Below, piece by piece: positions 3,601-5,528 of a DNA stretch of 64,000 bases. Numbering within the stretch: the first letter of the stretch is position 1; each line of letters opens with the position of its first letter. Location: contig NC_043008.1 in the NCBI RefSeq assembly GCF_006345805.1, positions 4,774,001 through 4,838,000 of the forward strand. The letters are read 5' to 3'. The position numbers were made by a program, and so were the translations under genes. This DNA comes from Octopus sinensis (lineage: Eukaryota). The notes beneath the pieces were generated by a model, which saw only the letters and a program-made list of their open reading frames with translations, ran no database searches and was not told the origin of the DNA.

Positions 3601-3847
3601 GGTACTCTTATTTTTATTACGTGCTTTCAGTGTACTATTCAATACAACACTGTATGCCTTGGCTACGTGTAGTGACTTGTTTTGGTTTTGTAATTTCTAT
3701 TATATTAACAGTACCATGTGTGTGGTGTCTAGTAGTACTAATGTTGTGCACATTAGTAAATCCTTTGGTTTTGCTTATATATTTGTCTGCATGTTTTTTG
3801 ATCCTTCCAAAAGCATGTATACAGGTTGTTTTGTTTACAGTTTTCAT

Positions 3848-4053
3848 TATTTACATTATTTGCAATTGACAGCTGATCAACGTTTCGGCTGATTTACCCT
3901 CCACCCTTCATCAGGTGTCTTGGGGAAATTTTGAATCTGGGTTCTCATTCCTAAAGTATTTTTGATGTTATTATTATTCAGGTCACTGCTTGGAATCAAA
4001 CTCGGAATCTTGGGGTTAGTAGCCCGCGCTCTTAACCACTACACCATATGCCC
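3848..4053 (-). mobile_element. tRNA-headed SINE-like element (family C) with hammerhead-like tail, internally deleted
   Basis: Head GGGCATATGGTGTAGTGGTTAAGAGCGCGGGCTACTAACCCCAAGATTCCGAGTTTGATTCC (A- and B-box-like), short (TAA)n, then GACAC-CTGATGA-A-GGGTG..CAGCC-GAAAC-GTT. Confidence 0.75.
3878..3919 (-). ncRNA. Minimal type-I hammerhead ribozyme-like motif (core intact, stem I 3' strand lost)
   Basis: CUGAUGA, stem II with one mismatch, GAAA, loopless AC/GU stem III, GUU triplet. Confidence 0.6.
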
Positions 4054-4393
4054 ATGGGCTCATGGAAAAGTGGACATTAAGTGATGATGATGTGAGATAT
4101 GAGCAGAGATACTTAATAAGATACTGACGAAGCTGTAAAAATACCGAATTGGCTCAGTGAAGTAAAAAATAAAAAAAAGACAAAAGTAAAAAAAAGTGTT
4201 AACCTTTTTTTTTTACTATATATCTGTTGAAATACATTATAGTTGTTTTAATTCAATTTTATAAATTATTAAAATACCTTGTCATTATGAAGGTGGTTAT
4301 TTGAAACATAACATGAAATTTTAATGGAAGGTTTTGAAGCGTACTTTAAAACAAGATCTGTGCATCCTGCAGCCAGGAGCAGTGTCAGGTGAA

Positions 4394-4701
4394 TTGGCTT
4401 AGTGGTTTAGAGCACGGGCTACTAACCCCAAGATTCTGAGTTCGATTCCAGGCAGTGACCTGAATAATAATAATAGTAATAATAATAATAATAATAACAA
4501 TAATAATAATAATAATAATAATAACAACATCGAAAAATACCTTAGGAATGAGAACCCAGGTTCGAAATTTCCCCCAAGACACCTGATGAAGGCTGGAGGG
4601 TATATCAGGCAAAACATTGTGTTAACAATGAAGATGAGGACAAATATCCATCAATTGTAAATAATGGAAATAATTCCTCATCTCTTAAATATAAAACTGT
4701 A
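4394..4701 (+). mobile_element. Family C SINE-like element, near full length
   Basis: Same head as the minus copy, (TAA)n at 4462-4525, tail with CTGATGA at 4583-4589. GAAACGTT has decayed to AAAACATT (CpG-type changes); stem I GACAC/GTGTT is retained. Confidence 0.75.
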
Positions 4702-5528
4702 TTACAGTTTTCATGTTCTGGTGTTCTCTATTTTCAGATATCAATGTTTGCATAATTTCTCCATCTTTTTTAGAGATACATTATTATTTGTTCAGGTAAC
4801 ACTTCCATTAGGGGGTACTTTCTTTCCTAATTGTCATTGATAGCAATATCTGGCCAATTATTCTTGTTCTTCCTGCCTGAATGGATTGGCATATCCCAAA
4901 GTATGGTTGCTTTGTCATTCTTTCAGACTCATTCCACCTCTTTTCTGCTGCTGTTTCATTATGCCAGCCTAACTCCAAGAGAATAAAGAATCTTTCAGTT
5001 TTAACTTTGAATCCTTCTTAATCAGTATTATGATTTCTCTTTGTTTATTTCCTCCTTGTTCAGTTTCTCTTCTCAGGCATAACTCATCTAGGGGCTTTTT
5101 TTGCTATCACCTAAGCATAACATTCTACGGACCATTTTCCTAGCTTAAGTTTTTCACAACTTCTGCTGCTCTTTTTCCTTTCTCCTCACAACTACTTATA
5201 TTATTTCAGCCTCTCTTTTGTACTTGTTTGCTATTTTGAAAATGAGAAACCAATTTTTTTTATATATTTTGTTGTGCTTGCAACCATATAAAATGTAACA
5301 AAACCTACAGTTGATCAGTAATTGCTTTTGACAGCCATATGAATCTTTGCAACAACCTTTCTGCTCTTTCAGAAACGAGTTGGATTTCTTTTTGGTTAGT
5401 TTTTCTTTGCTAGATTTTTAGTTATTCTCTTTGATATTATTTCAGTTAAAGCTTTGTAAGTAGTAGAATGATAGCTTATAGGTCTGTAAGTTTTAGATTT
5501 TATTGTTTCTCTTAGTTTTACAAATTAA

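What the first reader, a model, noticed from the sequence alone, without database searches (positions are those of the whole stretch)
3835..4714. Composite insertion with a 13-bp target-site duplication: inverted HHR-SINE, captured local DNA, HHR-SINE
Seen: TTACAGTTTTCAT occurs at 3835-3847 and 4702-4714. Removing the intervening DNA restores a continuous R4-type RLE coding remnant on the minus strand. Between the repeats lie a family C SINE on the minus strand (3848-4053), a ~335-bp inverted copy of 5540-5870, and a family C SINE on the plus strand (4394-4701). The SINE 3' end (AAAACTGTA) matches the bottom strand of the target. Inference: one event combined priming on target microhomology, template switching onto DNA ~1 kb away and fold-back onto the element itself. 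That is more complex than ordinary L1 twin priming. The two SINE copies differ visibly, so successive insertions at one site are the alternative.
Basis: partly seen in the sequence, partly recalled or inferred. Interest (0 to 1): 0.85.

Follow-up and report, generated by a model that had tools for sequence, protein, structure and literature searches.

The report
Penelope-type inverted insertion with captured DNA
The composite is real, but its inverted-plus-direct layout with one target-site duplication is the normal insertion form of a Penelope-like retroelement module in this octopus genome; the only unusual part is a 335-bp copy of DNA from 1.1 kb away caught between the two arms.

Summary
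These are the 13-bp direct repeat, the inverted arm, the 336-bp inverted copy of 5540-5870 and the direct arm. Eighteen paralogous copies of the host RLE-type LINE run uninterrupted across the joined flanks and carry one homologue of the 13-mer, so it is a true target-site duplication (TSD).

The interpretation needs reframing. "Family C" is the 3'-terminal module of a Penelope-like element (PLE). In three genomic copies it directly follows an RT/GIY-YIG ORF remnant. It carries a PLE-type minimal hammerhead motif, which no Rfam model detects.

In at least 18 of 29 unselected genomic copies it occurs as a head-to-head inverted pair. The inverted arm always lacks the last 30 nt (the "tail"), and the whole pair is flanked by a 7-13-bp TSD. 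This is the published PLE insertion architecture, not an exceptional L1-style event.

The unusual part is the filler. It is a one-off copy of local DNA, and the direction (donor to filler) is shown by truncated repeats. It sits beside the central palindrome.

Its divergence from the donor (6.0% non-CpG) is compatible with the age of the arms. Capture during integration is therefore favoured (about 0.55) over later repair of a break at the palindrome centre (about 0.27). This is a new member of a known kind.

The parts
3835..3847 (.). Left copy of the 13-bp target-site duplication TTACAGTTTTCAT
   Evidence: Only two exact copies in the window. Paralogous LINE copies have a single homologue of it.
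3848..4061 (-). Inverted arm. It covers family consensus position ~255 back to 1, plus a leader (GAGCCC). It lacks the 30-nt tail and carries a 26-nt internal deletion. It contains the 10-nt central palindrome GCCCATGGGC at 4050-4059.
   Evidence: Inverted arms end at consensus position ~246-256 in all 18 genomic dimers.
3876..3925 (-). Minimal hammerhead-like motif of the inverted arm: GACAC / CUGAUGA / extra A / helix II / GAAA / CG / UU / helix I strand. Here helix II carries a substitution relative to the consensus and the 3' strand of helix I is removed by the arm's deletion.
   Evidence: Pattern match at 3879-3914. The consensus fold gives helices I and II. The motif fits the min-HHR description in PMC4209133. 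Not detected by Rfam.
4062..4397 (+). Filler: an inverted copy of window 5540-5870. The last 3 nt (TGG, 4395-4397) are shared with the direct arm. Two unexplained nucleotides (TC, 4060-4061) lie on its left.
   Evidence: 22/331 substitutions and 3 indels against the donor. The only other copy above 80% identity in the 2.7-Gb genome is the donor.
4395..4704 (+). Direct arm, consensus ~10-285. It has a tRNA-like head with A and B boxes, an expanded (AAT)n at ~4463-4530, a hammerhead-like motif at ~4576-4625 (GAAA mutated to CAAA), and the 30-nt tail at 4675-4704.
   Evidence: Weak tRNA match at 4395-4451 (17 bits).
4675..4704 (+). One-sided 30-nt 'tail', TCCTCATCTCTTAAATATAAAACTGTATTA. It is present only on the direct arm and overlaps the TSD by TTA.
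   Evidence: [quoted passage not shown]
4702..4714 (.). Right copy of the 13-bp TSD
5540..5870 (+). Donor of the filler. It spans most of an old repeat (family X, ~5517-5749), unique DNA, and the last ~42 nt of a minus-strand SINE (family B, ~5828-6190).
   Evidence: Both repeats are complete at the donor and truncated in the filler, which gives the donor-to-filler direction.
3600..5500 (-). Host sequence: a decayed RLE-type LINE remnant (RLE-domain region), interrupted by the composite.

Best explanation
The composite is one insertion unit of a non-autonomous, SINE-like derivative of a Penelope-like element (PLE) in Octopus sinensis. Its parts are:
- an inverted arm that lacks the terminal 30-nt tail;
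- a short central palindrome;
- a direct arm that carries the tail;
- a 13-bp TSD made by staggered cleavage of an old RLE-LINE copy.

The direct arm was primed at the bottom-strand nick, with 3 nt (TTA) of microhomology to the element's 3' end.

The inverted arm was built on the other side of the break, from a point about 30 nt before the 3' end up to the very 5' end of the template. How PLEs do this is not solved. Here each arm holds sequence the other lacks, so the two arms were templated separately rather than one being copied from the other.

Before the two nascent strands were joined, the 3' end of the completed inverted arm added two nucleotides (TC). It then switched template to the top strand of DNA 1.1-1.5 kb to the right (5870 down to 5540) and copied 336 nt towards the break. 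It was joined to the slightly 5'-truncated direct arm through a TGG microhomology.

What is shown: the anatomy, the true TSD, the PLE affiliation, that the inverted/direct/TSD layout is the family norm, and the donor-to-filler direction.

What is inferred: that the filler was captured in the same event, and the order of strand synthesis.
For: True TSD and empty site:
- Two copies of the 13-mer only.
- 18 paralogous LINE copies are contiguous across the joined flanks with one homologue of the 13-mer.

The layout is the family norm:
- 18 of 29 copies chosen only by their 3' half are head-to-head dimers. Their inverted arm ends at consensus ~246-256 and never has the 30-nt tail.
- Exact TSDs of 7-13 bp flank the whole dimer in 15 of 18, and TSDs of at least 9 bp in 12 of 18.
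- L073 is a further case, with a 10-12-bp TSD.

PLE affiliation:
- In L036, L048 and L053 the direct arm directly follows an ORF remnant with GIY-YIG motifs.
- That remnant has 265 homologues (best E 5e-84). Some carry RVT_1, and one is named a GIY-YIG endonuclease.
- It aligns to the GIY-YIG part of an intact 781-aa PLE ORF.
- GIY-YIG hits are very abundant in the genome.

Published PLE architecture:
- An inverted 5'-truncated copy adjacent to the direct copy, a TSD around the whole, a 30-40-bp tail at one end, palindromes at the inverted junction, and host DNA captured between pLTRs.

Filler:
- It is unique to this locus and its donor.
- Donor polarity follows from truncated repeats.

Timing:
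- Filler versus donor is 6.0% non-CpG divergence (20/331). Arm versus arm is 8.6% (16/186). Twice the direct arm's distance from the family ancestor is 6.6%. The filler is therefore about as old as the insertion.

Inner junctions:
- In the other 21 dimers the inner junctions show 0-4 nt overlaps or short fillers, as expected for the joining of two nascent strands.
Against: - No orthologous or allelic locus could be examined, so the parts cannot be shown to have arrived together.
- The divergence figures have wide errors and lean slightly towards a younger filler (6.0% against 8.6%).
- None of 21 other inner junctions holds foreign DNA, so capture is rare and this is a single case.
- The filler sits 0-6 nt from the centre of a long inverted repeat. 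That is exactly where a later break at the palindrome centre would also place it.
- The hammerhead motif is not recognised by any Rfam model, and Pfam GIY-YIG does not score the decayed ORF remnant directly.
Confidence: 0.55

Rival explanations
1. Two-step origin. A standard PLE-type inverted dimer inserted first, making the TSD. Later the near-palindrome (2 x ~250 bp) suffered a break at its centre, by hairpin or cruciform processing. The break was repaired by synthesis-dependent, microhomology-mediated copying of 336 nt from DNA 1.1 kb away, with loss of about 3-9 nt of the direct arm's head.
For: - The filler lies directly beside the central palindrome GCCCATGGGC (4050-4059), and the direct arm has lost only positions 1-9.
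- Junctions carry 2 extra nt on one side and a 3-nt microhomology on the other, as in end-joining with templated insertion.
- Filler-donor divergence (6.0% non-CpG) is nominally lower than arm-arm divergence (8.6%).
- That long palindromes are revised at their centre is established knowledge, not tested here.
Against: - Several complete head-to-head dimers of similar age have kept an intact centre (L042, L044, L060, L033, L043), so the centre is not strongly unstable in this genome.
- The divergence difference is not significant, and the direct arm's own age estimate (2 x 3.3%) equals that of the filler.
- Host-DNA capture inside TSD-flanked PLE units has direct precedent (PMC3846280).
Confidence: 0.27
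2. Successive independent insertions of two family-C copies (and of the middle piece) at one site.
For: The two arms differ at 12.9% of positions and in microsatellite length.
Against: - One TSD brackets the whole, and neither arm nor the filler has a TSD of its own.
- The same inverted/direct/TSD layout recurs in at least 18 other loci, with no room for internal TSDs.
- Arm-arm divergence within dimers equals that between loci in a star-like family, so divergence does not argue for separate events.
- The filler is not a mobile element. It holds fragments of two different repeats plus unique DNA.
Confidence: 0.04
3. L1-style twin priming of a LINE-mobilised tRNA-SINE. One RNA is copied from both nicked strands, with an added template switch.
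For: A TSD surrounds an inverted 5' part and a direct 3' part, and there are microhomologies at the junctions.
Against: - The arms overlap over about 245 nt of the same template region, instead of being adjoining parts of one RNA.
- The inverted arm always starts about 30 nt from the 3' end, whatever the target sequence.
- There is no poly(A) tail.
- The module belongs to an RT/GIY-YIG element, not to an APE- or RLE-type LINE.
Confidence: 0.08
4. Assembly artefact created by collapsing or mis-joining inverted repeats.
For: PLE inverted structures are known to trouble assemblies (PMC8557442).
Against: - The arms are 13% diverged and differ in indels and microsatellite length.
- The filler is 6.6% diverged from its donor.
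- The flanks restore a LINE frame with an exact TSD.
- These are features of an old, real locus. Reads could not be checked.
Confidence: 0.03

Closest known systems
Canonical insertion architecture of endonuclease-containing Penelope-like elements (e.g. Pen2a_Av of Adineta vaga; Naiad, Penelope and Poseidon clades)
   Same: - An inverted 5'-truncated copy lies directly adjacent to the direct copy.
- The whole is flanked by a short TSD (8-10 bp reported; 7-13 bp here).
- A 30-40-bp 'tail' is present at only one end (30 nt here).
- There is a palindrome at the inverted junction.
- There is a hammerhead motif in the terminal repeat.
- Host DNA is occasionally captured inside the TSD-flanked unit.
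(PMC3846280, PMC8557442, PMC4209133.)
   Different: - Here the unit is a ~285-bp SINE-like module with a tRNA-like A/B-box head and an internal (AAT)n, mostly without any ORF.
- The captured DNA lies between the inverted and the direct arm.
- Its donor can be identified 1.1 kb away in cis, in inverted orientation.
L1 twin priming (5'-inverted L1 insertions)
   Same: A TSD surrounds an inverted 5' part and a direct 3' part. The inner junction has microhomology or small fillers. Both nicked target strands appear to serve as primers.
   Different: - In twin priming the two parts are adjoining, non-overlapping pieces of one RNA, and the internal priming site varies with the target.
- Here the arms duplicate the same ~245 nt, and the inverted arm always ends ~30 nt before the 3' end.
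- The enzyme is an RT/GIY-YIG protein and there is no poly(A).
Hammerhead-bearing non-autonomous retroelements of animals (Schistosoma Sm-alpha, non-LTR retrozymes)
   Same: They are short non-coding elements with type-I or minimal hammerhead motifs and are linked to PLEs as the mobilising partner (PMC4209133, PMC7229834, bioRxiv 10.64898/2026.07.22.740005).
   Different: Retrozymes are described as tandem arrays that yield circular RNAs. The copies seen here are dispersed inverted dimers with TSDs, and no tandem head-to-tail arrays were seen in 30 loci.
Centre-break revision of palindromes and templated insertions at double-strand breaks
   Same: A templated insert of a few hundred bp, copied from nearby DNA, with microhomology or 1-2 extra nt at the junctions, at the centre of a long inverted repeat.
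   Different: That process needs no retroelement machinery and would act after insertion. It cannot be told apart from same-event capture with the data in hand.

Membership tests
Penelope-like element (PLE) insertion unit | The terminal module is physically part of an element that encodes RT plus a GIY-YIG endonuclease. | tested here: met
   - In L036, L048 and L053 the direct arm follows an ORF remnant, with the stop codon ~50 nt upstream.
- The remnant has 265 homologues (best E 5e-84). Some carry RVT_1 and one is named a GIY-YIG endonuclease.
- It aligns to the GIY-YIG region of an intact 781-aa PLE ORF (E 0.005).
- Pfam GIY-YIG itself does not score the decayed remnant.
Penelope-like element (PLE) insertion unit | An inverted 5'-truncated copy lies directly adjacent to the direct copy, and the whole is flanked by a TSD. 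| tested here: met
   The window copy shows it. So do 18 of 29 genomic copies, 15 of them with exact 7-13-bp TSDs, and L073.
Penelope-like element (PLE) insertion unit | A 30-40-bp extension ('tail') is present at only one end. | tested here: met
   The 30-nt TCCTCATCTCTTAAATATAGAACTGTATTA is on every direct arm and on none of 16 aligned inverted arms.
Penelope-like element (PLE) insertion unit | There is a palindrome at the inverted junction. | tested here: met
   GCCCATGGGC at 4050-4059. Full-length dimers have GCCC-GT-GGGC.
Penelope-like element (PLE) insertion unit | There is a hammerhead ribozyme motif in the terminal repeat. | tested here: inconclusive
   - All core nucleotides and helices I and II are present, with the PLE-specific extra nucleotide after A9 and the palindromic 15.2-16.2.
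- No Rfam hammerhead model matches at E<=10 in the window copy or in six good copies.
- Self-cleavage was not tested.
L1-type twin priming | The inverted and direct segments are adjoining, non-overlapping parts of one template RNA. | tested here: not met
   Both arms cover consensus ~10-255, an overlap of ~245 nt.
L1-type twin priming | A TSD surrounds the whole inverted/direct insertion. | tested here: met
tRNA-derived SINE | The 5' head is derived from a tRNA and has internal Pol III A and B boxes. | tested here: inconclusive
   - The A box TGGCATAGTGG and the B-box-like AGTTCGATTCC are seen by eye in the consensus.
- Rfam tRNA gives only 17 bits (E 1.9).
- ARAGORN finds no tRNA at default settings.
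tRNA-derived SINE | It is mobilised by a LINE that shares its 3' end. | tested here: not met
   The 3' module is found downstream of an RT/GIY-YIG (PLE) ORF remnant, not of a LINE.

The most novel reading that the evidence does not exclude
The locus preserves an intermediate of the still-unsolved PLE integration reaction. After the inverted arm was completed, its 3' end added 2 nt and jumped to DNA 1.1-1.5 kb away on the other side of the break. It copied 336 nt towards the break and was then joined to the direct arm.

Three family-wide patterns go with this. Either arm can be the complete one. The inverted arm never carries the 30-nt tail. Inner junctions show 0-4 nt overlaps.

Together these would indicate that PLE inverted repeats arise from two separately templated strands joined by microhomology. 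Simple self-priming fold-back would not produce them. They would also indicate that the PLE reverse transcriptase can use nearby chromosomal DNA, or a nascent transcript of it, as template.
Probability: 0.4. Interest if true: 0.55.

Novelty: new member of a known kind. Interest (0 to 1): 0.35.

Why it matters
What looked like a uniquely complex retrotransposition event is the standard footprint of Penelope-like elements. Annotation pipelines often misfile this retroelement class as SINEs or LINEs.

For octopus genome annotation, this abundant "SINE" family should be treated as a PLE terminal module and its copies as inverted dimers.

For mechanism, the PLE integration cycle is unsolved. Two things here give concrete constraints that could be tested genome-wide or in a retrotransposition assay. 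One is a filler whose donor is identified in cis. The other is the statistics of which arm is complete and which carries the tail.

Tried and rejected
1. The 13-mer as an illusion of the near-palindromic tail. The rc of the TSD resembles ...AAAACTGTA, and the inverted arm could be full-length with an 18-nt deletion. Rejected for two reasons. Paralogous LINE copies show the 13-mer is host sequence present once. All other inverted arms also end at ~246-256, next to unrelated TSDs.

2. The filler as an independent insertion of a repeat. Part of it belongs to an old family (71-79% identity). However, the family's boundaries (5517/5525 to 5740/5749) do not coincide with the filler's ends, and the filler also holds unique DNA and a SINE-B fragment.

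3. The end of the inverted arm as the hammerhead cleavage site. The predicted cleavage site (GAAACGUU|G, consensus ~190) is far from position ~255, so this was rejected.

4. Testing whether the two arms of a dimer come from one template by comparing within-dimer with between-locus divergence. The values were 7.1% and 7.4%, so the test has no power in a star-like family. One T/A variant is concordant in about 13 of 16 dimers, read by eye.

5. Rfam search for hammerheads, at gathering and E<=10 thresholds. No hit.

6. Search for the autonomous partner. One intact PLE (L081, 781 aa) shares no DNA with the family. I did not try another route.

7. Pfam on the ORF remnant. No hit. The affiliation was settled by homologue search and pairwise alignment instead.

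8. ARAGORN on the head. No tRNA at default settings.
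Full report
**1. Observation**

The region was read directly.
- TTACAGTTTTCAT occurs only at 3835-3847 and 4702-4714 in the 64-kb window.
- Between the two copies lie three parts: a minus-strand copy of a repeat (3848-4061), a 336-nt stretch (4062-4397) that is the reverse complement of 5540-5870, and a plus-strand copy of the same repeat (4395-4704).

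**2. The duplication is a true TSD in an RLE-type LINE remnant**

- I joined the flanks, keeping one copy of the 13-mer, and searched the window's own genome. That genome is 2.72 Gb, and the window is C12:4774001-4838000.
- About 40 paralogous copies match at 66-70% identity across the junction without a gap.
- In an alignment of 18 of them, each has one homologue of the 13-mer, TTTT[C/T]AG[A/G][T/C]TCCAC. This is a paralogous empty site.
- A paralogue ORF (L077, 514 aa) matches the C-terminal part of the R2 retrotransposon protein (9nl2_A, E 3.5e-5) and the zf-RVT family. The host is therefore an RLE-type LINE. Assignment to the R4 clade was not tested.

**3. The filler is a copy of local DNA, and the direction is donor to filler**

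- Only two places in the genome match the filler at more than 80% identity: itself and 5540-5870.
- Part of it belongs to an old repeat family (71-79% identity). That family spans ~5517-5749 at the donor, so the filler's end at 5540 lies inside it.
- The other end of the filler holds only the last ~42 nt of a minus-strand SINE that is complete at the donor (~5828-6190).
- Both repeats are whole at the donor and cut in the filler. The filler is therefore the copy.

**4. The repeat family**

- A search with the 3' half of the plus arm found more than 3000 candidates, and 29 loci were retrieved with 1.5-kb flanks.
- The 285-bp consensus has these parts: a tRNA-like head (A box TGGCATAGTGG, B-box-like AGTTCGATTCC), an (AAT)n tract, a body with CTGATGA...GAAAC, and a 3' end ...TCCTCATCTCTTAAATATAGAACTGTATTA.
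- The plus arm's 3' end overlaps the TSD by TTA.

**5. The inverted/direct layout is the family norm**

These 29 loci were selected only by the 3' half of one arm.
- Eighteen carry an inverted arm head-to-head with the direct arm, and three more carry partial ones.
- The inverted arm always ends at consensus ~246-256 and never includes the last 30 nt.
- Exact direct repeats of 7-13 bp flank the entire dimer in 15 of 18, and repeats of at least 9 bp in 12 of 18. The chance expectation for the longest shared word between two ~33-nt windows is about 5 nt.
- A further dimer with a 10-12-bp TSD turned up by chance in L073, inside a paralogue of the same LINE family.
- The inner junctions vary. Both arms may be complete, or either arm may be truncated, with 0-4 nt overlaps or short fillers of element origin.
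- The window copy, with its 13-bp TSD, is an ordinary member of the family apart from its 336-nt foreign filler. None of the other 21 junctions has a foreign filler.

**6. The family is the terminal module of a Penelope-like element**

- In L036 the two heads are separated by 339 bp. That sequence recurs in L053 (90% identity) and L048 (83%).
- Translated, it is the C-terminal end of an ORF with GIY-YIG motifs (...NCVYSIPCSCGSLYKDKT...RVEEHRK...SGIADHVW...KLKEAAHM). In L053 the ORF continues upstream for ~900 bp, and the stop codon lies ~50 nt before the module.
- This fragment has 265 homologues (best E 5e-84). Several carry RVT_1, and one is named a GIY-YIG superfamily endonuclease.
- One homologue is an Octopus sinensis protein on a contig whose length equals that of G000:C1. 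This identifies the genome as Octopus sinensis.
- The fragment aligns to the GIY-YIG region of an intact 781-aa PLE ORF from the same genome.
- GIY-YIG hits are very abundant in this genome: 4846 candidates, with ORFs of up to 883 aa.

The published description of PLE insertions matches point for point (PMC8557442; PMC3846280):
- an inverted 5'-truncated copy adjacent to the direct copy;
- a TSD around the whole;
- a 30-40-bp tail at one end only;
- palindromes at the inverted junction;
- occasional capture of host DNA inside the TSD-flanked unit.

**7. Hammerhead**

- No Rfam hammerhead model matches the window copy or six well-preserved copies at E<=10.
- Read by eye on the CpG-restored consensus, the motif is: GACAC (helix I), CUGAUGA, an extra A, GGCUG...CAGCC (helix II), GAAA, CG, U, U17, then GUGUU (helix I).
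- RNAfold recovers helices I and II.

**8. Anatomy at the centre**

- The inverted arm is complete to its very 5' end: ...CCATATGCCCATGGGC plus TC. L049 is similar, with ...CCATGGGCTTATAT.
- The direct arm starts at consensus ~10 and shares TGG with the end of the filler.
- The inverted arm thus holds positions 1-9 and a leader that the direct arm lacks. The direct arm holds the 30-nt tail that the inverted arm lacks. Neither arm can be a simple copy of the other.
- Across the family, either arm can be the complete one.

**9. Timing**

- Filler versus donor: 22/331 substitutions, of which 20 are non-CpG (6.0%).
- Arm versus arm: 24/186, of which 16 are non-CpG (8.6%).
- The direct arm is 3.3% and the inverted arm 6.5% from the CpG-restored ancestor, counting non-CpG sites.
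- These figures are compatible with one age, but they do not exclude a somewhat younger filler.
- Within-dimer and between-locus arm divergence are equal (7.1% and 7.4%). The visible difference between the two arms therefore says nothing about separate events.

**10. Verdict**

The composite is a PLE-type insertion unit (confidence about 0.85).

That the filler was captured during that same integration is the favoured reading (about 0.55 overall). The proposed route is a template switch of the completed inverted-arm strand to DNA 1.1-1.5 kb away, followed by copying towards the break and microhomology joining to the direct arm.

The main rival is a later break at the palindrome centre, repaired by templated synthesis (about 0.27). 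Successive insertions, classical twin priming and misassembly are unlikely.

The decisive test is comparison with orthologous loci, or a genome-wide census of fillers. Neither could be run here.

Noticed in passing
L033:940-1482, L043:764-1322, L055:981-1333, L058:909-1485, L060:~700-1245 (oriented copies in /scratch/ori.fa): The same ~550-bp element (86-96% identical; ATGCCCTGATGCAGCACCAGGCAGTGGCTC...CTTTGATGGCATGCACTGC.CTCTCACTCA) is inserted into the internal (AAT)n tract of family-C arms in 5 of 29 loci. It appears to be an (AAT)n-specific mobile element.
   Followed up: partly
L073:928-1494: An independent family-C inverted dimer lies inside a paralogue of the same RLE-LINE family, roughly 85-110 bp from the site homologous to the window's target. 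It has an extra partial inverted head and a 10-12-bp TSD (TTTTCTGTAT). This could be chance or target preference.
   Followed up: partly
G000:C6:12730300-12735300 (L081) and about 60 other places with identical GIY-YIG scores: An apparently intact 781-aa RT/GIY-YIG ORF is flanked by TA/CA microsatellites. Many hits share the same score (31.4 bits), and several share the same 781-aa open frame. This suggests a young PLE family in Octopus sinensis that is unrelated in DNA to family C.
   Followed up: partly
window 5828-6190 (-) and 2950-3270: There are two copies of another SINE-like family, with a tail ...ATGGAAAAGTGGACATTAAATGATGATGATG and an internal (CA)n. The first interrupts the LINE remnant next to the donor of the filler.
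   Followed up: no
window 5517-5749: An old dispersed repeat (family X) has at least 487 candidates in the genome at 68-81% identity. Its type is unknown.
   Followed up: partly
window 61456-61580: Two identical 54-nt stretches (CTGATGAGAAAGCCACAATATGG...) lie in inverted orientation 17 bp apart. They may belong to another inverted-repeat element.
   Followed up: no
window 29317-29341 (-): A compact CTGATGA-N-GAAAC motif (CTGATGAACGGCAACGAGAAACTCA) may be a hammerhead-like core of a different family.
   Followed up: no
window 3549-3600: An (ATT)17 microsatellite lies at the apparent end of the LINE remnant. (AAT)n/(ATT)n tracts are very frequent in this window.
   Followed up: no
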